In this document: piece by piece, positions 10,359-48,036 of the stretch
Layout: each line of letters begins with the position of its first letter
Numbering within the stretch: position 1 is the stretch's first letter
Origin: Haliotis cracherodii
Lineage: Eukaryota
Reading direction: 5' to 3'
DNA: 64,000 nucleotides
Assembly: GCF_022045235.1 (NCBI RefSeq)
Contig: NW_027266297.1
Coordinates: forward strand, 20,646,001-20,710,000
Notes under the pieces: generated by a model
Databases searched by the model: none
What the model was told of the DNA's origin: nothing
What the model saw: only the letters and a program-made list of their open reading frames with translations
Made by a program: the position numbers and the translations under genes

Positions 10359-10963
10359 GCTGATATCTCAACTCGCGTGTTGCCATGGTTAATAGGGCGA
10401 GTGATTGATTCCAGGTTGTCGTACACGGCCATACTGATGGAGTTGCCTTGTGTAGGCGACGTCACAACGACGTGGATTGCTCCCGAAGGAGGCGTCAACA
10501 TAAACACGGGACGTTGGGAGGAGGAGACGGTGAGATCAGTCAGGCTCTCGCTGTTAGGTAGCGTATCCATGAAGGTTGCCCCTTACACCCACTGAAAGTG
10601 ACTCCTACCGCCTCGAAGCATGTTTTTTCCCCCGCGAGATAGTCGTAGCCTAGGTCGTAGCAAGCAGCAAGACGTCACATGGTCCTTCCACAAAGGTCGT
10701 TGAACGACCCCAAGGAGATGATGTTTACTTTGGAAAGCACTCGAACACTTCTGATTGGCCTATTGTTTTTCTTTGCGATCTGATGGCGTGGTTGAACCAT
10801 TTTATATAACCATACGCGCAGGTATGGTGCTAAGGTTGTTCCAATTTGTACCATGGTTTAAGTCCACCACTTTGACTTAGGCGTTTTCCAGAGCGCAGGT
10901 GGAGCCACTGACGATGGTGTTGAAGCGGAGAAGAGGTACGCCATACACGTATTTGCCGACCCT
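10359..10963 (-). pseudogene. Degenerate M4 protease copy (3' part), internally deleted and 5'-truncated
   Basis: Nucleotide homology to 18570-19670 (e.g. [43 protein letters not shown]); frameshifts; TAC>TAA stop at about 10878; about 500 bp including HELAH missing at about 10800. Confidence 0.9.
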
Positions 10964-10964
10964 C

Positions 10965-11800
10965 TCGTTGCAGACGGACTATTGGTGAGGCTGTGGACGC
11001 GGCTATGAATGTAAGGACGGAGACGCTGAGATACCTGTGTAACCAAGGACGGGGTTCCCCTACTACATCAGACTACCACCACCAAATAGTCCACTCTCTG
11101 TATGCAGTTTCGTGCATAACGTTGCTTGCCACGCCTGTAAACACGACTTCTACCATCCACACGGCGAAGCATAAAACGTGACTCGTCAGTAAGCCAAACT
11201 TGTCACCATCACAGTTGTGGCCATACTCTGTGACCTTGACACCATTGTCGTCGCAGCAGACGATGCAGGCTCATCAAAATGACACCTCGAACTGGTCGTC
11301 TAGCACGAATACCTACAGCGCTTAAACGGTTCCTCACTATCTGGGCTGATATCATGCGCAGTCGTGGGCCCACTTGCACAAAACGACCTTAGCGCTGCGA
11401 CTATTGTCAGCCTATGTTAAAGTATGGGCGTTACGATATCATCTGAGTGCTAAGATCGCTCTGTGCAAGTATTGCCGTAGTTGTAGCGGTGGTCATGGTG
11501 TCTTTCACGCAAGTGACGTAGCCGTAGAAATCTGTCCTGTGCTCTAGTAGTGACACGTGGTCAACCGGATCTGGCAAGGTCACGTGTTGCCCCGTGTGTC
11601 GTCTCCAAACGGTTTCACAGTAATGGTGCTTGGTGCTACGTTGAAAACCCTGGCTTCAGCTGAAGATGATTCTCCTCTTTGCAGTTGGCCTATGTCGTTG
11701 TTGCGTTCCGTAAGTCGTGGCATGTTTTCGCTGTTCACTTGCGGTAAAATTGTGATGGCATGCATATGAAAACCCAACGTTTTTAATAGCACAACAGGTG
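10965..11800 (-). mobile_element. Degenerate Tc1/mariner transposon fragment
   Basis: Minus-strand remnants MPRLTERNNDIGQLQ..ARVFNVAPSTI, RSG*PRVTTRAQDRFLRLRHLRER, DESRFMLRRVDGRSRVYRR. Confidence 0.85.
11372..11470. mobile_element. About 100-bp palindromic MITE-like element nested in the Tc1 relic
   Basis: ACTTGCACAAAACGACCTTAGCGCT ... AGTGCTAAGATCGCTCTGTGCAAGT inverted repeats; related copy at about 60815-60915 (CTATGTTAAGGTATGGGAGTTACGA core). Confidence 0.7.
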
Positions 11801-16012: not shown

Positions 16013-18477
16013 CATAATTTTGTTCAAAAACATATGCATAGACAGGTGCAGAAAGATAAACACTCCCGGTTTAATTTCATTTTCTAATATTTTTAGCATT
16101 ATGATTACGTTACCCAGAAAAATATATAGATACATAATTTAAAGATGCCGTGTTATTCTATGAGGCTATGACAATTTTAGACATTGGATAACATGGGTAA
16201 TTGAATGCGAAATTCATTCGTCTGAAGTTAACGTGTTTGATGTGCTATACATGGAGTCCAGAAAAAAATATCAAGTATATTTTTTAAGACGCCTTGAATT
16301 TCATATTTTTTTCATGAAACAGTTCGCAACAATAATAACAAGGTGACATTGTTCCGTACAGCGACGAGAAAATTCAAAACGATATTTTAAGTGACTGTTC
16401 ATTTCCGGGGCATAACCCATTAGCTGTTCAATATTTATTATGACATTTTGTATACATTCAAGGCAAGTGCTGCCTTGTGCCTTATGTGTTGTTATTTATT
16501 TGATGTATGTTGTTATTTAATACATGTATGTGAAAATGGGGGTATGGTTCATTTCCTTAGTATACGCTGTTCAGTATTAACTATGAATCTGTACAGATCA
16601 GACTCTGCCGAACTGATGCCCTTTGCTAAATATGAATCGAGAACAATTGTTTGCGTTTCCAAGGCAACACGTCGTCTTTGTGGCGCCGTTTGCTTTTCAT
16701 TTTTAGATTTTGCGTTTCATGCAACACGTTGGATTTCGATTCAAATGCAGATAAGGATCAAGTACAAAGCTAACTCATAAAGTGTTATCAGTTATTGATA
16801 TTCAGGTCACACAAACTAGATAAAACTACTTGTATTTCATACATTTCGCATTTGTGAGGGAAATAGCAAACTGAAAAAAACAACTCTTGCAACCGAAGCT
16901 GAAAGAACTATAGCGAATATTGCTGACTGCCAGTTAAAACAAATATATATACTTGTGTAGTTAGCAAAATGTCTTCTATTTCCATAGACATGTCGACGCT
17001 TATGTTGACAGGGAAATTAGCTAAAGTTGGAGACGAAGAATACGTTGAGTCCAATTTTTTTCGGTTGGCAGAAAAACAAACAAATACAAATACTAATAGA
17101 AATATGTCGAGGGGTGATTCCAATTCTACTATAAATCAAGTCCAGCAAGCAGGCTTATCCCACTCCCGGCTAACCTATACAGGTGCTGTCGGAATACCTA
17201 ACTAACAGTAGAGATGTAAACATATATATACACTATTGGACAACAATGGACAGACAAAGAGACAATGGCGTTGCCCTGGATATGGGACTTAGGATGTGAT
17301 TAGAGACATGGCCTAGGGGAATATGGTTAAAATGTCATAATGTGAAATGCTGTGTTAGACAATGGCACAATTGACCGCTGTTACGCGTGAAGTACAGCAT
17401 AAGATAAAACGTTGTCCAAACAGAGTGATATTAAGGCACTCTGTGACAGACACATGATATGAATGGGGATCATGGGTTAGGATAGATCCCAAGCAAGCTA
17501 TGCTGGTCTAAAGATTTGATGCAATTCATCGGGTGGTTAGGTCGGTGAAGTGGTTGATTGCACGTCGTCTTACCCTAGCAGTCGTCACAGTAGCAGTCTG
17601 TCCGCTATCCCGAGAGTTATATGCATATCCGCTGATAAACTGAACACAATTAAGCAATACAAAACCACGCCACAAACATGTGAAAATTAAGTACTGTTTC
17701 AATCTCATGCATTAGGACCCATTGCATCAACCAGTGTGGTTCTCTATAATTGTATGCGAACACAAATGGAAGAATCGGTGAAGCAGCGGAGACACCATAT
17801 TGTGGTGGAGCGCGCATTATTTTGAGTGTATTGTGTTAATGTGTAGATGTGGTGCTTATGTAAACGATCCAGTTTAAAGCATCGTTATTAAGAACTAGCT
17901 GTGGATCAAACATTTCCGCATGTTACATTTTTTAAATATTTTTATTGAGTGAGTGAGTGTTATATAATGATTGTAAAAGGAAACTCCGACACGAAGCCAC
18001 AAAGGACCACGGACACGGCGCTGACAAGCCGATGATCACAATCAGGGCGAATCTCGGATTTAAAGCCAACATTGTCGGATCATGCCACGCCGAAGGCACA
18101 TAAGTGCAGCGAATTACGGAGCTTCAGGCGATTGGGCCTCCCGGGTCCCCATACCACGGCTACAGCAATATTGCCAACCAATAGTATATCTCCTATAAAA
18201 ATGTCTCTTAATAATGATCACAATCAGGGCGAAGCTGGGTTTTGAAGCCAACATTGTCGGATCATGCCATGCCGAAGGCTCACAAGTGCTGCTTCAGGTG
18301 ATTGAGCCTCCTGTCTCCCAATAAAACGGCTACATCAATATTACTAACCAATAGTATATCTTCTGTTAAAATATCACATAATAATTGTTCATTTCATGGA
18401 AACCAACTTAAATTTGAACTTGTATATACTTTAATCAATGAAAGCTACAGAGCATATTTTCTGCAATAAATTGACGA

Positions 18478-20797
18478 TCATTCATACGTGATTTGAACGT
18501 TGACGTCAGTGATGTCGTTACCCGATTCAGCAGATACACGCAGGTACAGCGACGGGGACCCAGATGGAAGCTGATATCTCAACTCGCCTGTCGCCATGGC
18601 TAGTGGGGCGGGTGATTCCAAGTTGTCGTACACGGCCATGTTGATGGAGTTGCCTTGTGTAGGTGACGTCACAACGACGCGGGCTGCTCCCGATGGAGGC
18701 GTCAACATAAACACGGGACGATGGGAAGAGGAGACGGTGAGACCAGTCAGGGTCTCGCTGTCAGATAACGTCTCCATAAAGGTCGGCTCCTGACACCCAC
18801 TGAAAGTGATTCCTACCACCTGGAAGGATTTTTTTACCTCCAGATAGTCGTAACCGAGGTCGTAGCAAGCACGCATGACGCCACAAGCGCCTTCCTCAAA
18901 GGTCGTTGATCGAGCCCAGTAGATGACGTTAGCTCTGAGGAAGCATTCGAACGCTTTTCTGATGGGCATTTTGTTGACCTCCACGAGCTGGTAGAAGGCG
19001 TGGTTGAAGATGCCGCTGCTGTAGTGAACGTCGACGTTGTTGTTGTAGTCTCTGGTGTGCTTGAGTGAACCCCCATCTCGAGAAGGATCTTGAAAGTAAC
19101 GCAGGGCCCCATTGCTGCTTTTAAAGATTTCAGCTCCAACGAACCAGTCGTTAGAGCCACGAGCAAACATCTCAGTTGTCTCCCCTGTTATATCCGAGAA
19201 GGCTTCGTTGATACCACCAGACTGATCGTCGTAGATGAGGTTGGAGTTTTGTTCGGTGACACCATGGGCAAGTTCATGAGCAATAACGTCTTGGTTAACC
19301 AGTGGGTAGAAAGTGCTTCGACCATCGCCGAAAGTCAGGCTGCTGCCGTCCCAGAAGGCGTTCTCGTAGTTCCTGCTGTAGTGAACAAAGAGCACTGGCT
19401 TAAAGTTGAGGGGAGTCATCGTGTACCATTCGATAAACATACGGGCTGATTTGGTGCCAAAGTTCATGGCGTCCAGAACGGGGGAGTAAGCACCGTTGAT
19501 GGCGTCGTCATAACCGTTGGCACATGTGTAGGAAGAGGCGGCGCGGTTGTTCCTATTTGTACCCTGGTTTAAGTCCACCACTTTGACGTAGGCGTTTTCC
19601 AGAGTGCATGTGGCGCCACTGACGGTGGTGTTGAGGCACAAAGGAGGAACGCCATAAACGAACTTTCCAACTTTAAGATTTCCACCCTCCCCTTTAGCAG
19701 TATTGCCGCAGGTTGTTGGGCCTGCTGTTGTTGGTGCAGCTGTTGTTGGTCTTGGTGTTGTTGGTGCGGCTGTAGTGGGGCCTGCCGTTGTTGGTGCGGC
19801 TGTTACGGATTCTTGAGTTTGTGGGTCTCCGCCACAACTGTCAGTTGTAGTTTCTGGTTCAGGTGTGGTGTTCTCGCCAGGACACTCATCATCCCCAGGA
19901 GACTGTCTTCGGTGTCGTACAACAGCTTGACGTCTCTCTACTGCTTTGTTCTGGATGTTGTTGAAGGAACGGACAGTGGTAAGGTCACAGGCGTCGATAA
20001 AGTAGCAAGGACGGCTGGGTCTGTTGCCCTTCATGTAAAAGAAGTTGATCTCATAGGTCAGACGAGCCACGCCGTCCTTCTTGACGTAGACGTTCTTCTT
20101 GACGTTGACTTTGGTGACTTGAGACGCTCGGACCCCCTCCTGTGTGAAAGCTACCCTCTTGACGGTGTCATGTGTCTGCTCACAATCCTCAGGGTTGGGA
20201 ATATCTTCCTCCAGTGATGTGAAAAGTTCACCGCTGACGACGCCTGTGTAACCTAGGCTGGGGTTGACGTCGGCTGCCACGCTCCCTCCCACTACTTCCA
20301 GACCACCATAGGTCTGCTGTAGACGTTGCTTGATCTTGCCTCGCACTGTCTTGAGGGATTCCCCGGGGACGATAGCGCTTATGCCGCGCAGCCCCAACTC
20401 TGCACGCAGTTCCTCACGAGTGGCGTGGAAATGAGACCGAAGCTTCAAACGTCGAGTGATGCCAGCAACGTTAAAGCGACGTGCGGCCTCAGTCGTGTAC
20501 ACTGTGAGGGACAGCAGTCCTGAAAAACGAAGTAAAGTAGAATATATCAGATATCTATTTGAAACCTCAAATTGATATTACATGAAACCCGTTTTCTATT
20601 CCTTTCTAATTTTTACTCTGAATGCAATTTGATTGAAATGAATTACGTTGCAATTAATATCTAGTCAGCGAAATTGTACGATGGATGCATTTATTCTGAC
20701 ACGGAAAGTCCCCGTTCCAACACAATGACTGGGAGCATATATGTGTCTTCATATAATGTTACAATTACTTACCCAGCAGGATGATTTGACACTTCAT
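18478..20797 (-). CDS. Peptidase M4 (thermolysin/vibriolysin/LasB-like) preproprotein, copy 1; exons 20797-20773 and 20519-18478
   Basis: Exon 1 ATGAAGTGTCAAATCATCCTGCTGG|GTAAGT; acceptor cgtttttcag|GA; gives signal [23 protein letters not shown]-like ([13 protein letters not shown]) and PepSY-like (YFIDA) propeptide; [37 protein letters not shown] (19278-19264), [23 protein letters not shown]; C-terminal PPC-like domain. TATATAA 20849-20843; ATTAAA 18435-18430. Confidence 0.95.
20703..20713 (-). promoter_or_regulatory. Canonical NF-kappaB site in intron 1 of M4 copy 1
   Basis: GGAAAGTCCCC on + = GGGGACTTTCC on the coding strand; variants in copies 2-4. Confidence 0.4.
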
Positions 20798-21165
20798 GTT
20801 GTCCTCAAGTGTATGAGATGACCAGTGACCAATAGCCTGGACTTATATACACATGGACATCACGAAACACGCACCTGTCCTCATATTAATTTGTCCGAGA
20901 ACAATGCATAATATCATAACCCCAGGACATAATCTCATACGCCACACTCCGCTCTTGTGTTACAAAGCACAAAGATACTCGATACATAAGACACGTGCGG
21001 ATTACATAAGTTTCTCATCATTTGTACGTGCTGGGGGAAATATGTACGATCTGTTTGTGCTGTCATTAGTGATAACAGCTATAGTCCTCCAGCATGACAA
21101 CGCTAGAACCATGCATTCTGGTAAACTGACACGGGAGTTCCTCATCAACATGAAAGTTATTATAT

Positions 21166-37934: not shown

Positions 37935-39304
37935 GTTGTCCTCAAGTGTATGAGATGACCAGTGACCAGTAGCCTGGCCTTATATACACCATGGACATCA
38001 CGACACACGCACCTGTCCTCATTAATTTGTCCGAGAACAATACATAATATCATAACCCCAGGACATAATCTCATACGCCACACTCCGTTCTTGTACTACA
38101 AAGCACAAAGATACTAGATACATAAGACACGTGCTGATTACATAAGTTTCTCATCATTTGTACGTGCTGGTGGAAAATATATATGTAATCATTACTTGTT
38201 ATCTCTAAACATCAGCAACGTAGTGTAAACACTGTCAGCGGGTGTGCCTTGTTTTCAAAAATATGTTTCTAGCCTATCTCAGATCCCGGGTTACACGGGT
38301 GGCCCAGTCGCACCGTACTTCGTTGTGCAGAGCTTCGTAACAGAATCACACCAAAAAACTAAAATAGGGTTCGAATCTCAGATACGTTTTGATATGTTAC
38401 TCGGTTTGTCGGCACCATACCCGTGCTCGTCGATTTCACCAAAGTAGTAAACGTCTGGGACCTTCACTTCAGGATTTCCTCCCACATCAAGCTGACACGA
38501 TGTAACATAACAGAAGATGTTGAAATTGACGAACATCCCAAGTCACTCTATCTTTAGTCACTTAGCTATATAAAAACCTGTATAAAGGGGTTAACCATTG
38601 GTACTACTATAGGACAATAAACGACGGTTGTTAATAACCTTGAATATAGGCCAGTGTACGAGAATATGATGAAATTTAAACAAAGGATGTATGACTGTCT
38701 TTCTCAAAACTGGCATCTCTTCATGGAGCTCTCATCTAAATGCAAATATTACTCACAGTACAAATATCTCCTTTATATGGAAAAAAACTTATTATCATGT
38801 GAAATATCTGCTTATCATAAAAGATCAATATGTATGTTCAGGTGTAACAACTTTAAACTTGCATTTGAAACTGGAAGACATTCTAAAATCCCATATGAAG
38901 AACGTGTGTGCGTGTATTGCCACTCCAAAGGTTTAACTCTAATTGAGGATGAGTATCATGTATTGTCAATCTGTGACAGATACCGAGCTGCAAGAAGAGA
39001 ATGCTTTGCTGAAAGTGAAATCAACTTTACCACATTTCAACAGTTTTTAAACCTTATGTCAACAAACTCCACAAGAACTTTAAAACACATTGGACTATTC
39101 TTACCCAAAGATATGAATATACGTATCTCATCACTGTTCTAACGTATTCTAAAACTATTTGTCTTAACATAACGCCATAGTATATAAGCATGTATGATCT
39201 ACATTATGTCAACATGTATTATGGGCTGGAGGCCTGATTACTGAATAAATCTGTCTGTCTGTCTGTCTGTCTGTACGAGAATAGTCTATCATCACGAACG
39301 TTAG

Positions 39305-44380: not shown

Positions 44381-46730
44381 TCATTCATACGTGATTTGAA
44401 CGTTGACGTCAGTGATGTCGTTACCCGATTCAGCAGATACACGCAGGTACAGCGACGGGGACCCAGATGGAAGCTGATATCTCAACTCGCCTGTCGCCAT
44501 GGCTAGTGGGGCGGGTGATTCCAGGTTGTCGTACACGGCCATGTTGATGGAGTTGCCTTGTGTAGGTGACGTCACAACGACGTGGGTTGCTCCCGATTGA
44601 GGCGTCAACATAAACACGGGACGATGGGAGGAGGAGACGGTGAGACCAGTCAGGGTCTCGCTGTCAGATAACGTCTCCATGAAGGTCGGCTCCTGACACC
44701 CACTGAAAGTGATTCCTACCACCTGGAAGGATTTTTTTACCTCCAGATAGTCGTAGCCGAGGTCGTAGCAAGCACGCATGACGCCACAAGCGCCTTCCTC
44801 AAAGGTCGTTGATCGGCCCCAGTAGATGACGTTAGCTCTGAGGAAGCATTCGAACGCTTTTCTGATGGGCATTTTGTTGACCTCCACGAGCTGGTAGAAG
44901 GCGTGGTTGAAGATGCCGCTGCTGTAGTGAACGTCGACGTTGTTGTTGTAGTCTCTGGTGTGCTTGAGTGAACCCCCATCTCGAGAAGGATCTTGAAAGT
45001 AACGCAGGGCCCCATTGCTACTTTTAAAGATTTCAGCTCCAACGAACCAGTCGTTAGAGCCACGAGCAAACATCTCAGTTGTCTCCCCTGTTATGTCCGA
45101 GAAGGCTTCGTTGATACCACCAGACTGATCGTCGTAGATGAGGTTGGAGTTTTGTTCGGTGACACCATGGGCAAGTTCATGAGCAATAACGTCTTGGTTA
45201 ACCAGTGGGTAGAAAGTGCTTCGACCATCGCCGAAAGTCAGGCTGCTGCCGTCCCAGAAGGCGTTCTCGTAGTTCCTGCTGTAGTGAACAAAGAGGACTG
45301 GCTTGAAGTTGAGGGGAGTCATCGTGTACCATTCGATAAACATACGGGCTGATTTGGTGCCAAAGTTCATGGCGTCCAGGACGGGGGAGTAAGCACCGTT
45401 GATGGCGTCGTCATAACCGATGGCACATGTGTAGGAAGAGGCGGCGCGGTTGTTCCTATTTGTACCCTGGTTTAAGTCCACCACTTTGACGTAGGTGTTT
45501 TCCAGAGTGCATGTGGCGCCACTGACGGTGGTGTTGAGGCACAAAGGAGGAACGCCATACACGAACTTTCCAACTTTAAGATTTCCACCCTCCCCTTTAG
45601 CAGGATTGCCGCAGGTTGTTGGGCCTGCTGTTGTTGGTGCAGCTGTAGTTGGTCTTGGTGTTGTTGGTGCGGCTGTAGTTGGTCTTGCTGTTGTTGGTGC
45701 GGCTGTAGTTGGTCTTGGTGTTGTTGGTGCGGCTGTTACGGATTCTTGAGTTTGTGGGTCTCCGCCACAACTGTCAGTTGTAGTTTCTGGTTCAGGTGTG
45801 GTGTTCTCGCCAGGACACTCATCATCCCCAGGAGACTGTCTTCGGTGTCGTACAACAGCTTGACGTCTCTCTACTGCTTTGTTCTGGATGTTGTTGAAGG
45901 AAAGGACAGTGGTAAGGTCACAGGCGTCGATAAAGTAGCAAGGACGGCTGGGTCTGTTGCCCTTCATGTAAAAGAAGTTGATCTCATAGGTCAGACGAGC
46001 AACGCCGTCCTTCTTGACGTAGACGTTCTTCTTGACGTTGACTTTGGTGACTTGAGACGCTGGGACCCCCTCCTGTGTGAAAGCTACCCTCTTGACGGTG
46101 TCATGTGTCTGCTCACAATCCTCAGGGTTGGGAATGTCTTCCTCCAGTGATGTGAAAAGTTCACCACTGACGACGCCTGTGTAACCGAGGCTGGGGTTGA
46201 CGTCGGCGGCCACGCTCCCTCCCACTACTTCCAGACCACCATAGGTCTGCTGTAGACGTTGCTTGATCTTGCCTCGCACTGTCTTGAGGGATTCCCCGGG
46301 AACGATAGCGCTTATGCCACGAAGCCCCAGCTCTGCACGCAGTTCCTCACGAGTGGCATGGAAATGAGACCGAAGCTTCAAACGTCGAGTGACGCCAGCA
46401 ACGTTGAAGCGACGTGCGGCCTCAGTCGTGTACACTGTGAGGGACAGCAGTCCTGAAAAACGAAGAAAAGTAGAATATATCAGATATCTATTTGAAACCT
46501 CAAAGTGATATTATATGAAACCCGTTTTTCATTCCTTTCTAACTTTCACTTTGAATGCAATTTGATTGAAATAAATAACGTTGAAATTTATATCTAGTCC
46601 GCGAAATTGTACGATGAATGCGTTTATTCTGATAGAGAAAGTTCCCGTTCAAAAACCATTACTTGGAGCATATATGTGTCTTAATATAATGTTACAATTA
46701 CTTACCCAGCAGGATGATTTGACACTTCAT
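44381..46730 (-). CDS. Peptidase M4 preproprotein, copy 4; exons 46730-46706 and 46452-44381
   Basis: Same structure and catalytic motifs; intact frame. Confidence 0.95.
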
Positions 46731-48036
46731 GTTGTCCTCAAGTGTATGAGATGAACAGTGACCAGTAGCCTGGCCTTATATACACCCATGGACATCTCAA
46801 CACACGCACCTGTCCTCATATTAATTTGTCCGAGAACAATACATAATATCATAACCCCAGGATATAATCTCAAACGCCACACTCCGTTCTTGTGCTACAA
46901 AGCACAAAGATACTCGATACACAGGCATGCACGTGCGGATTACATAAGTTTCTCATCATTTGTACGTGCTGGTGGAAAATATATATGTAATTATTACTTG
47001 TTATCTCTAAACATCAGCAACGTAGTGTAAACACTGTCAGCGGGTGTGCCTTGTTTGCAAAACAATGTTTCTAGCCTATCTCAGATCCCGGGTTACACGG
47101 GTGGCCCAGTCGCACCGTACTGAGCTTAGTAACAGAGTCACACCAAAAAACTAAAATAGGGTTCGAATCTCAGATACGTTTTGATATGTTACTCGGTTTG
47201 TCGGCACTATACCCGTGTCTCGTCGATTTCACCAAAGTAGTAAACGTCTGGGACCTTCACTTCAGGATTTCCTCCCACATCAAGCTGACACGATGCAACA
47301 TAACAGAAGATGTTGAAATTGACGAACATCCCAAGTCACTCTATCTTTAGTCACTTAGCTATATAAAAACCTGTATAAAGGGGTTAACCATTGGTACTAC
47401 TATATGACAATGAGCGACAGTTGTTAATAACCTTGAATATAGGCCAGTGTACGAGAATATGATGAAATTTAAACAAAGGATGTATGACTGTCTTTCTCAA
47501 AACTGGCATCTCTTCATAGAGCTCTCATCTAAATGCAAATATTACTCACAGTACAAATCTCTCCTTAATGTAGAAAAATACTCATGTGAAATATCTGCTT
47601 ATTATAAAAGATTAATATTTATGTTCAGGTGTAACAACTTTAAACTTGCATTTGAAACTGGAAGACATTCTAAAATCCCATATGAAGAACGTGTGTGCGT
47701 GTATTGCCACTCCAAAGGTTTAACTCTAATTGAGGATGAGTATCATGTATTGTCAATCTGTGACAGATACCGAGCTGCAAGAAGAGAATGCTTTGCTGAA
47801 AGTGAAATCAACTTTACCACATTTCAACAGTTTTTAAACCTTATGTCAACAAACTCCACAAGAACTTTAAAACACATTGGACTATTCTTATCTAAAGATA
47901 TGAATATACGTATCTCATCACTGTTCTAACGTATTCTAAAACTATTTGTCTTAACATAACGCCATAGTATATAAGCATGTATGATCTACATTATGTCAAC
48001 ATGTATTATGGGCTGGAGGCCTGATTACTGAATAAA

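What the first reader, a model, noticed from the sequence alone, without database searches (positions are those of the whole stretch)
20519..20850. Hidden 25-nt first exon and phase-1 intron split the M4 signal peptide
Seen in all four copies: TATATAA, 45 nt, ATG AAG TGT CAA ATC ATC CTG CTG G|GTAAGT ... TTTTTCAG|GA CTG CTG, giving [23 protein letters not shown]. The remaining 2 kb is intronless. Inference: this is the pattern expected when a bacterial ORF captured a host promoter/signal exon, and it argues strongly against contamination.
Basis: seen in the sequence. Interest (0 to 1): 0.75.

Follow-up and report, generated by a model that had tools for sequence, protein, structure and literature searches.

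The report
Split signal peptide in abalone protease genes
Four tandem abalone genes for a bacterial-type zinc protease each start with a tiny 25-base exon and a short intron inside the secretion signal, a real but ordinary gene structure that public gene models already contain.

Summary
All four minus-strand M4 (thermolysin-family) genes carry an identical 25-nt coding exon (MKCQIILL plus one G). It is followed by a GTAAGT...TTTTTCAG intron of 253, 241, 253 and 253 nt in phase 1, then an uninterrupted exon of about 2.05 kb. One detail is wrong: the TATATAA box lies 45 nt before the ATG in three copies and 33 nt in copy 2.

The exon is not hidden. Four RefSeq models named for Haliotis cracherodii match the window exon by exon.

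RNA-like contigs cover only exon 2 and the 3'UTR and stop at the acceptor, but no junction-spanning contig was listed.

Every other intact M4 paralog in this genome has a phase-1 intron 9-11 codons before the predicted signal cleavage site, with introns of 241 nt to 27.9 kb. The intron is therefore old.

Contamination is excluded. The claim that a host signal exon was captured is plausible but untested, because exon 1 encodes only 8 1/3 of about 20 signal residues. Phase-1 introns near signal peptides are a known regularity (PMC1626468).

The scan noted a spliced bacterial-type M4 gene on another piece of this genome (s1-847928).

The parts
20843..20849 (-). TATATAA box of copy 1, ending 45 nt before the ATG
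20773..20797 (-). copy 1 exon 1 coding part, 25 nt: MKCQIILL plus the first base of a Gly codon
   Evidence: equals residues 1-8 of RefSeq model P0124
20520..20772 (-). copy 1 intron, 253 nt, GTAAGT...CAG, phase 1, GC 0.32
   Evidence: zero depth in the RNA-like runs X1 and X5
18478..20519 (-). copy 1 exon 2 coding part. It holds the rest of the signal peptide, the propeptide, a Thr/Pro-rich linker, the M4 catalytic and helical domains and a C-terminal domain, and ends in a stop.
   Evidence: covered by RNA-like contigs from 18413 to 20520
18430..18435 (-). ATTAAA polyadenylation signal, 42 nt after the stop codon; the same offset in all four copies
   Evidence: an X1 contig ends at 18413
30262..30268 (-). 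TATATAA box of copy 2, ending 33 nt before the ATG because of a 12-nt deletion
30204..30228 (-). copy 2 exon 1 coding part
   Evidence: P0121
29963..30203 (-). copy 2 intron, 241 nt
27921..29962 (-). copy 2 exon 2 coding part
37980..37986 (-). TATATAA box of copy 3
37910..37934 (-). copy 3 exon 1 coding part
   Evidence: P0126
37657..37909 (-). copy 3 intron, 253 nt
35585..37656 (-). copy 3 exon 2 coding part
46776..46782 (-). TATATAA box of copy 4
46706..46730 (-). copy 4 exon 1 coding part
   Evidence: P0123
46453..46705 (-). copy 4 intron, 253 nt
44381..46452 (-). copy 4 exon 2 coding part

Best explanation
Each of the four tandem units is a working two-exon animal gene for a secreted thermolysin-family (M4) zinc protease precursor. 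A TATA-box promoter drives a short 5'UTR and a micro-exon. That exon supplies the only usable start codon, the charged N-region and the first half of the hydrophobic core of a 20-residue signal peptide (MKCQIILL-G). A 241-253-nt GT-AG intron in phase 1 is spliced out. Exon 2 supplies the rest of the core and the cleavage site ([11 protein letters not shown]|ARR), followed by the propeptide, linker, catalytic domains and C-terminal domain in one uninterrupted frame, with ATTAAA 42 nt after the stop.

The intron is not recent. All intact M4 paralogs of this abalone genome have a phase-1 intron at the equivalent place in the signal peptide. This includes lineages whose nearest relatives are bivalve and cephalopod genes. 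The intron therefore most likely dates to the early history of the mollusc M4 family, which looks derived from a vibriolysin-like bacterial gene.

Shown: the exon and intron anatomy, identity to the public gene models, the paralog-wide phase and position, and the coverage pattern of RNA-like contigs. Inferred: actual splicing, secretion, the age of the intron and the bacterial origin. How the intron arose stays open. I slightly favour recruitment of a host 5' end, because the only coding intron sits at the extreme 5' end and three paralog lineages also have a 5'UTR intron in front of an ATG micro-exon.
For: Anatomy.

Family: Peptidase_M4 at 93.5 bits and Peptidase_M4_C at 115.8 bits, both above the curated cut-offs. 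The HELAH and GGINEAFSD motifs are visible.

Haliotis rufescens and H. asinina models start MKCQIILLG... and MKSQIILLG....

Need for exon 1: the first in-frame ATG of exon 2 is at codon 161 in copies 1 and 4 and at codon 119 in copy 3. Only copy 2 has an early one, at codon 5.

Signal-like N-terminus: the maximum 10-residue Kyte-Doolittle mean is 2.61, starting at residue 5. The hydrophobic stretch spans the exon junction.

Reads: runs X1 and X5 (labelled 'RNA?', a guess) have summed contig depth from 34.7 (the junction bin in X5) to about 4800 over 18394-20527 and zero depth over 20528-21100. X1 record 8 ends at 20520 with 3 further letters that do not fit the intron. X8 and X9 behave like DNA and run through the intron.

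Paralogs: the C45 cluster (4 loci) has a 25-nt exon 1, G|GT, and introns of 275, 682, 660 and 412 nt. L011 and L012 have 31 nt, G|CT, and introns of 1629 and 511 nt. L013 has 31 nt, G|TG, 27,897 nt. L014 has 31 nt, T|TG, 10,118 nt. L015 has 55 nt, G|TG, 19,623 nt. All are phase 1 and lie 9-11 codons before the ...A|A(K/R/Q) site.

Tree (60 rows): the 22 bacterial rows form one side of a branch (SH-aLRT 98). L013-L015 group with Pecten, Tegillarca, Pinctada, Octopus, Pomacea and Nucella (99).
Against: No junction-spanning read or contig was seen. Table 5 lists no joint across 20520-20772. All four runs were contigs, which cannot show starts or ends, and the RNA label of X1 and X5 is the tool's guess. 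I could not see what evidence the RefSeq models rest on.

SignalP was not available, so the signal peptide rests on hydropathy and the -3/-1 rule read by eye.

The intron position is not identical in an ungapped comparison. It splits codon 9 in the C34 and C45 genes, codon 11 in L011-L014 and codon 19 in L015. Homology of the intron therefore needs small indels in a fast-evolving signal peptide, and parallel gains at g|g sites are not excluded.

The tree is unrooted, built with the quick method, and samples only the nearest bacterial relatives.
Confidence: 0.87

Rival explanations
1. Origin by intron insertion. The transferred bacterial ORF kept its own start codon and signal peptide, and a spliceosomal intron was later inserted at a g|g (glycine-codon) proto-splice site inside the signal-peptide coding region. 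No host exon was captured.
For: The exon junction is TGG|GA in the window copies and TAG|GT in the C45 copies, that is g|g and ag|g, splitting a Gly codon in phase 1. This is the context described for the known excess of phase-1 introns near signal peptides (PMC1626468, passages). The signal peptide is about 20 residues, like the bacterial ones. Its core and cleavage site are continuous with the bacterial-type ORF. No donor gene for exon 1 was found in the genome.
Against: It is the only intron in about 2.1 kb of coding sequence in every paralog, and it lies within the first 25-55 nt. A random insertion would rarely land there. L011, L012 and the C45 copies show a second acceptor just upstream of the ATG, giving an ATG micro-exon flanked by two introns, which looks like a host-type 5' end. 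The split codon is Ala, Val or Leu, not Gly, in four lineages.
Confidence: 0.4
2. The 25-nt exon is a gene-prediction artefact. The real mRNA starts within or just after the 'intron', and translation starts at an internal codon, giving a protease without a signal peptide.
For: Copy 2 and the H. rufescens model have an in-frame ATG at ...LSLT-M-YTTEA. No spliced contig was listed.
Against: Three of the four copies have GTG at that codon, and their next in-frame ATG is 119-161 codons downstream. RNA-like runs have zero depth in the intron. Exon 1, its donor and a phase-1 acceptor recur in all nine other intact paralogs despite unalignable introns of 275 nt to 27.9 kb. An M4 precursor with a propeptide is a secreted enzyme by family knowledge.
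Confidence: 0.04
3. The M4 genes are bacterial contamination or a very recent insertion in the assembly.
For: The catalytic half is 47-57% identical to proteins named for Aeromonas, Shewanella, Colwelliaceae and Thalassomonas, or unnamed.
Against: Thirteen intact loci lie on two contigs of 73 and 71 Mb. Each has a spliceosomal intron. The window holds Tc1/mariner relics between and near the copies. Orthologous models exist in four Haliotis species and other molluscs. DNA-like runs of three other organism codes hold the locus including the intron.
Confidence: 0.01

Closest known systems
RefSeq gene models 'neutral protease-like [Haliotis cracherodii]' XP_071119669.1, XP_071119670.1, XP_071119668.1 and XP_071119666.1 (P0124, P0121, P0126, P0123)
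   Same: Identical to window copies 1-4 exon by exon, including MKCQIILL, the split Gly and the whole second exon.
   Different: Nothing in the protein differs. I could not see their mRNA evidence, UTRs or transcription start.
Bacterial vibriolysin / pseudolysin-type M4 metallopeptidases (proteins named for Aeromonas, Shewanella, Vibrio, Colwelliaceae)
   Same: They share the Peptidase_M4 and Peptidase_M4_C domains and the HEXXH and NEAFSD zinc sites. Identity is about 47-57% over about 42-54% of the query. They also have an N-terminal signal peptide and a propeptide.
   Different: The bacterial genes have no introns. Most carry a C-terminal PPC domain (PF04151), which was not reported for the mollusc proteins. 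They lack the Thr/Pro-rich linker. The (K/R)-(V/I/F/L/M)-(N/D/S)-(A/V) start of the propeptide is present in 27 of 42 mollusc proteins but only 4 of 171 other proteins.
Excess of phase-1 introns around signal-peptide cleavage sites in animal genes (Tordai & Patthy and Vibranovski et al., as summarised in PMC1626468)
   Same: The intron is in phase 1, in a g|g context, splits a glycine codon and lies inside the signal-peptide coding region.
   Different: Here the intron lies 9-11 codons before the cleavage site, in the hydrophobic core, not at positions -1 to -5. The gene is of apparent bacterial origin.
Horizontally acquired bacterial genes that gained eukaryotic gene structure, for example the bacterial alpha-amylase gene in Basidiomycetes (PMC3584928) and the aerolysin-like biomphalysins of the snail Biomphalaria (PMC8047071). 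For both I saw only the search listing and the start of the abstract.
   Same: A secreted bacterial-type enzyme or toxin is encoded in a eukaryotic chromosome and expanded into a gene family.
   Different: The title of the amylase paper reports rapid and massive intron gains. The abalone M4 genes have a single coding intron in all 13 intact loci.

Membership tests
Peptidase family M4 (thermolysin family) | Pfam Peptidase_M4 (PF01447) and Peptidase_M4_C (PF02868) above the gathering scores | tested here: met
   93.5 bits against a cut-off of 22.4, and 115.8 bits against 24.4.
Peptidase family M4 (thermolysin family) | HEXXH zinc-binding motif plus a third ligand Glu in the ...NEAFSD segment (motif names recalled) | tested here: met
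   the translations of all four copies read [10 protein letters not shown] and [11 protein letters not shown].
Peptidase family M4 (thermolysin family) | N-terminal FTP-type propeptide | tested here: inconclusive
   PF07504 scores 18.6 bits, below the cut-off of 21. Relatives such as P0004 carry the precomputed hit.
Spliceosomal GT-AG intron of a protein-coding gene | Consensus donor, polypyrimidine tract with a CAG acceptor, and a reading frame restored only by removing the intron | tested here: met
   GTAAGT and TTCGTTTTTCAG, with G|GA restoring Gly and the frame. The intron GC is 0.29-0.32 against 0.53 for exon 2.
Spliceosomal GT-AG intron of a protein-coding gene | Junction-spanning transcripts | tested here: inconclusive
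   RNA-like contigs stop at 20520, with zero depth in the intron, but no joint is listed.
Sec-type cleavable signal peptide | Charged N-region, a hydrophobic core of 7 or more residues, and small residues at -3 and -1 | tested here: met
   Lys at residue 2, and a maximum 10-residue KD mean of 2.61 from residue 5. The T-E-A|A site was read by eye. SignalP was not available.
Bacteria-to-animal horizontally transferred gene | Animal sequences form one group nested among, or sister to, bacterial ones, and the family is absent from other animals | tested here: inconclusive
   the 22 bacterial rows form one side of a branch (98), but the tree is unrooted and samples only the nearest bacteria. In the 240 rows listed, every row that names a eukaryote names a mollusc. 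Absence elsewhere was not searched.
Bacteria-to-animal horizontally transferred gene | Integration in a host chromosome with host-type signals | tested here: met

The most novel reading that the evidence does not exclude
The phase-1 intron is the single scar of the event that domesticated a vibriolysin-like bacterial gene in a mollusc ancestor. A host promoter with an ATG micro-exon was spliced onto a cryptic acceptor inside the bacterial signal sequence. That one junction has been kept in every descendant gene across gastropod, bivalve and cephalopod lineages, while no other intron entered the 2 kb of coding sequence.
Probability: 0.3. Interest if true: 0.5.

Novelty: already known. Interest (0 to 1): 0.25.

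Why it matters
The structure shows that these bacterial-type protease genes are true, expressed abalone genes and not contamination. It also shows how they obtain a start codon and a secretion signal. The wider point is modest. This is a mollusc-wide M4 protease family of apparent bacterial origin, with 13 intact loci in this genome. Every locus keeps one 5' intron and no other coding intron. Six literature searches did not find this family described. It would make a clean case for studying how a transferred gene acquires a eukaryotic 5' end and how rarely introns are gained afterwards. The exon and intron themselves are already in public annotation, so the finding as written adds little.

Tried and rejected
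1. Junction reads. Read laying gave only contigs and listed no joint across the intron.

2. Test of whether the signal/propeptide junction is inherited from bacteria. The motif [KR][VIFLM][NDS][VA] at residues 16-45 occurs in 27 of 42 mollusc proteins, 4 of 16 unnamed proteins and 4 of 171 other proteins that start with M. At least one of those four, P0061, has a mollusc-like N-terminus. This gives no support for an ancestral bacterial junction, and the test does not discriminate between the two origin scenarios.

3. Search for a donor of the promoter and exon 1. The 581-nt 5' region matches only the four tandem copies (89-100%) and one degenerate M4 locus on contig C12 (73% over 130 nt). No host donor was found, which is expected if the event is old.

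4. Exon 1 of L013-L015. Regular-expression and tblastn scans of 10 kb upstream found nothing credible. One NYITFL hit was a chance match without a start codon. Degenerate patterns from the H. rufescens orthologues then found one unique site each, with zero control hits.

5. Literature. Searches on mollusc, gastropod or abalone together with thermolysin, vibriolysin, M4 or horizontal transfer found no paper on mollusc-encoded M4 genes. Supplements are closed and were not consulted.

6. The joined exon 1 + exon 2 protein or mRNA was not built or searched.
Full report
WHAT IS THERE. The window carries four minus-strand open frames of 674, 674, 684 and 684 codons, at 18478-20502, 27921-29945, 35585-37639 and 44381-46435. 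Each matches Peptidase_M4 and Peptidase_M4_C well above Pfam's cut-offs, plus a sub-threshold FTP propeptide match. The HELAH and GGINEAFSD zinc-site motifs are visible in the translations.

Upstream of each frame, the string from ATG to GTAAGT occurs identically four times, with zero matches expected by chance. A script gave the exact anatomy:
- Exon 1 coding part is 25 nt, MKCQIILL plus G.
- The donor is GTAAGTAA and the acceptor is CGTTTTTCAG.
- Exon 2 begins GA CTG CTG, so the split codon is Gly and the intron is in phase 1.
- The introns are 253, 241, 253 and 253 nt.

The introns have GC 0.29-0.32 against 0.53 for exon 2. ATTAAA lies 42 nt after the stop in all four copies. TATATAA ends 45 nt before the ATG in copies 1, 3 and 4, but 33 nt before it in copy 2. 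Copy 2 has 12-nt deletions both after the box and in the intron.

IT IS ALREADY ANNOTATED. The best protein hits are abalone RefSeq models. The H. rufescens model P0001 begins [24 protein letters not shown] and the H. asinina model P0002 begins MKSQIILLG. The 90% cluster of P0001 holds four proteins named for Haliotis cracherodii, of 688, 688, 698 and 698 residues, on a contig of 73,386,740 bases. The contig of the window has the same length.

I compared them exon by exon, without building the joined sequence. Residues 1-8 equal exon 1, residue 9 is the split Gly, and residues 10 to the end equal exon 2. This holds for copy 1 = P0124, copy 2 = P0121, copy 3 = P0126 and copy 4 = P0123. The exon is hidden only from a six-frame ORF reading. 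I could not see what transcript evidence the models rest on.

TRANSCRIPT EVIDENCE. Sixteen runs were listed, and none is on record as RNA. I laid four of them, one from each of four studies, on 18200-21100.
- X1 and X5 are labelled 'RNA?', which is the tool's guess. Their summed contig depth is mostly in the hundreds to thousands from 18394 to 20527 (34.7 in X5's junction bin). Depth is zero from 20528 to 21100, which covers the intron, exon 1 and the promoter. X1 also has zero depth below 18394.
- X1 record 1 ends at 18413, which is 17 nt past ATTAAA.
- X1 record 8 ends at 20520, the last base that both the intron and exon 1 would share. It has three further letters that did not fit the genome.
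- X8 and X9 have flat depth and run straight through the intron and upstream (records 22, 23, 30, 31), as genomic DNA would.

This is the pattern expected of a spliced mRNA. However, no joint across the intron was listed, contigs cannot show ends, and exon 1 plus its UTR is too short to be laid alone. Direct proof of the junction is still missing.

EXON 1 IS NEEDED. In copies 1, 3 and 4 the frame has GTG where copy 2 has ATG (...LSLT-V/M-YTTEA). The next in-frame ATG lies 119-161 codons downstream. The most hydrophobic 10-residue window starts at residue 5 and spans the junction (KD mean 2.61). T-E-A|A fits the small -3/-1 rule, which I read by eye because SignalP was not available.

THE INTRON IS OLD. 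The window's genome has 27 matches to the protein. Thirteen are intact loci whose main frame runs 633-892 codons without a stop. All nine loci outside the window have a phase-1 intron in the signal-peptide coding region:
- The four-gene cluster on contig C45 is 77-78% identical. Exon 1 is 25 nt (MNFCLIQL or MNFRLIHL, plus G), followed by GTAAGT, with introns of 275, 682, 660 and 412 nt. Exon 2 begins GT CTG CTG ... LLALTVY(N/S)IEA|ARR.
- L011 and L012 are about 40% identical. Exon 1 is 31 nt (MQALILAVIA or MRAFILTLIA, plus G), followed by GTAGGT, with introns of 1629 and 511 nt. The split codon is Ala, followed by LCHVM(H/R)VDA|AQV.
- L013, L014 and L015 are 39-41% identical. Their exon 1 was found as unique genome matches to degenerate patterns, with zero control hits. 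The coding parts are 31, 31 and 55 nt. The donors are GTAAGA, GTGAGT and GTAAGT, and the introns are 27,897, 10,118 and 19,623 nt. The split codons are Val, Leu and Val, followed by AAFTQHEVQS|AKR, LLSVCVHHIEA|AKR and TAVLFSCTKA|AVR. H. rufescens orthologue models give the same N-termini.

The intron therefore always lies 9-11 codons before the predicted cleavage site and is always in phase 1, while intron sequence and length are free to vary. Counted from the start codon, the position differs: codon 9, 11 or 19. Calling it one intron requires small indels in the signal peptide, and parallel gain cannot be excluded.

In a 60-row tree, L013-L015 fall in a clade with Pecten, Tegillarca, Pinctada, Octopus, Pomacea and Nucella (support 99). 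The window genes fall in a gastropod clade with L011/L012, Aplysia, Elysia and Babylonia. If the intron is homologous, it predates that split.

ORIGIN. In the same tree the 22 bacterial rows form one side of a branch (98), and all mollusc and unnamed rows lie on the other side. In the 240 rows listed by the two protein searches, every row that names a eukaryote names a mollusc. M4 is predominantly a bacterial family, which is established knowledge that I recall. Together these fit one old bacteria-to-mollusc transfer from a vibriolysin-like donor. But the tree is unrooted and narrowly sampled, and other animals were not searched.

That claim is not tested by the anatomy. Exon 1 holds only 8 1/3 of about 20 signal residues, and the rest of the core and the cleavage site belong to exon 2.

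Two histories fit:
- A host first exon spliced to a cryptic acceptor inside the bacterial signal sequence.
- An intron inserted at a g|g site of an intact signal sequence.

The second history is the explanation proposed for the well-known excess of phase-1 introns near signal peptides. Exon shuffling is the competing explanation (PMC1626468, abstract and passages read).

I lean slightly to the first history for two reasons. The only coding intron sits in the first 25-55 nt of a 2-kb frame in every paralog. L011, L012 and the C45 genes also show an acceptor just before the ATG, that is an ATG micro-exon between two introns.

Neither of my two tests discriminated between the histories. The 5' region has no other copy in the genome apart from M4 loci. 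The propeptide-start motif is a mollusc feature that is rare in the bacterial set (27 of 42 against 4 of 171).

CONTAMINATION. It is excluded by the following:
- 73-Mb and 71-Mb contigs.
- Tc1/mariner relics at 24473-25081 and 57842-58669.
- Spliceosomal introns in every locus.
- Orthologues in four Haliotis species.
- DNA-like runs of other organism codes that hold the locus with its intron.

VERDICT. The gene structure is real, correctly read and functionally sensible. It is also already in public gene models and conforms to a known regularity of secreted-protein genes. The added value here is the paralog-wide conservation of the intron's phase and place. No paper on mollusc-encoded M4 genes turned up in six searches, and supplements were closed.

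Noticed in passing
window 10380-10990 (-): A degenerate M4 gene fragment with several in-frame stops. It matches residues about 275-632 of the intact copies in pieces (70-77% in the better pieces, 35% in the weakest). It is a dead fifth unit at the edge of the tandem array.
   Followed up: partly
window 18200-18369 (3' flank of copy 1): A direct repeat of about 170 nt lies just downstream of the polyadenylation site. Contigs of X5 and X8 'go back 170' here, and X5 depth continues over it. This suggests a longer 3'UTR form or read-through.
   Followed up: no
L003 and L006 (contig C45), L028 and L029 (contig C34, just beyond the window's end): The C45 paralogs, L011 and L012 have a polypyrimidine-AG acceptor 13-26 nt before the ATG. 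The ATG therefore sits in a micro-exon of about 44-51 nt between a 5'UTR intron and the signal-peptide intron. In L003 and L006 an upstream ATATAA...CACTGGTCA...CACAG|GTAAGT segment resembles the promoter and 5'UTR of the window copies, which lack that 5'UTR intron.
   Followed up: partly
window 19700-19935 and equivalents: The Thr/Pro-rich linker (PTT(A/P)(G/R)PTTAA units) differs by one 10-residue unit between copies 1-2 (674 codons) and copies 3-4 (684 codons). An RHRR site precedes it. The paralog L012 carries a very long GVTSTEEF-type repeat instead (P0017, P0016).
   Followed up: no
G000 contig C12:51783152-51785925: Another M4 locus is broken into pieces, two of the five with an internal stop (44-87% identity). 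It still keeps a 73% match to the TATA, exon 1 and donor region of the window copies. It is probably a pseudogene with the same two-exon layout.
   Followed up: partly
proteins P0023 and P0061 (unnamed, contigs of about 2.3 kb): These proteins have a mollusc-like start (MWKFVVLVLIGAVLREAQAARRVDAK...) but bacterial-type C-terminal PPC domains. P0023 is sister to the bacterial clade in the tree (support 99). They could be an intermediate form or an M4 gene of another eukaryote.
   Followed up: no
window 24473-25081 (-) and 57842-58669 (-): Tc1/mariner-type transposase relics (DDE_3, HTH_Tnp_Tc3_2). One lies between M4 copies 1 and 2.
   Followed up: no
all 13 intact M4 loci of G000: Apart from the signal-peptide intron, none of the main frames (633-892 codons) is interrupted. 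That is unusually intron-poor for an old gene family in a mollusc genome.
   Followed up: partly
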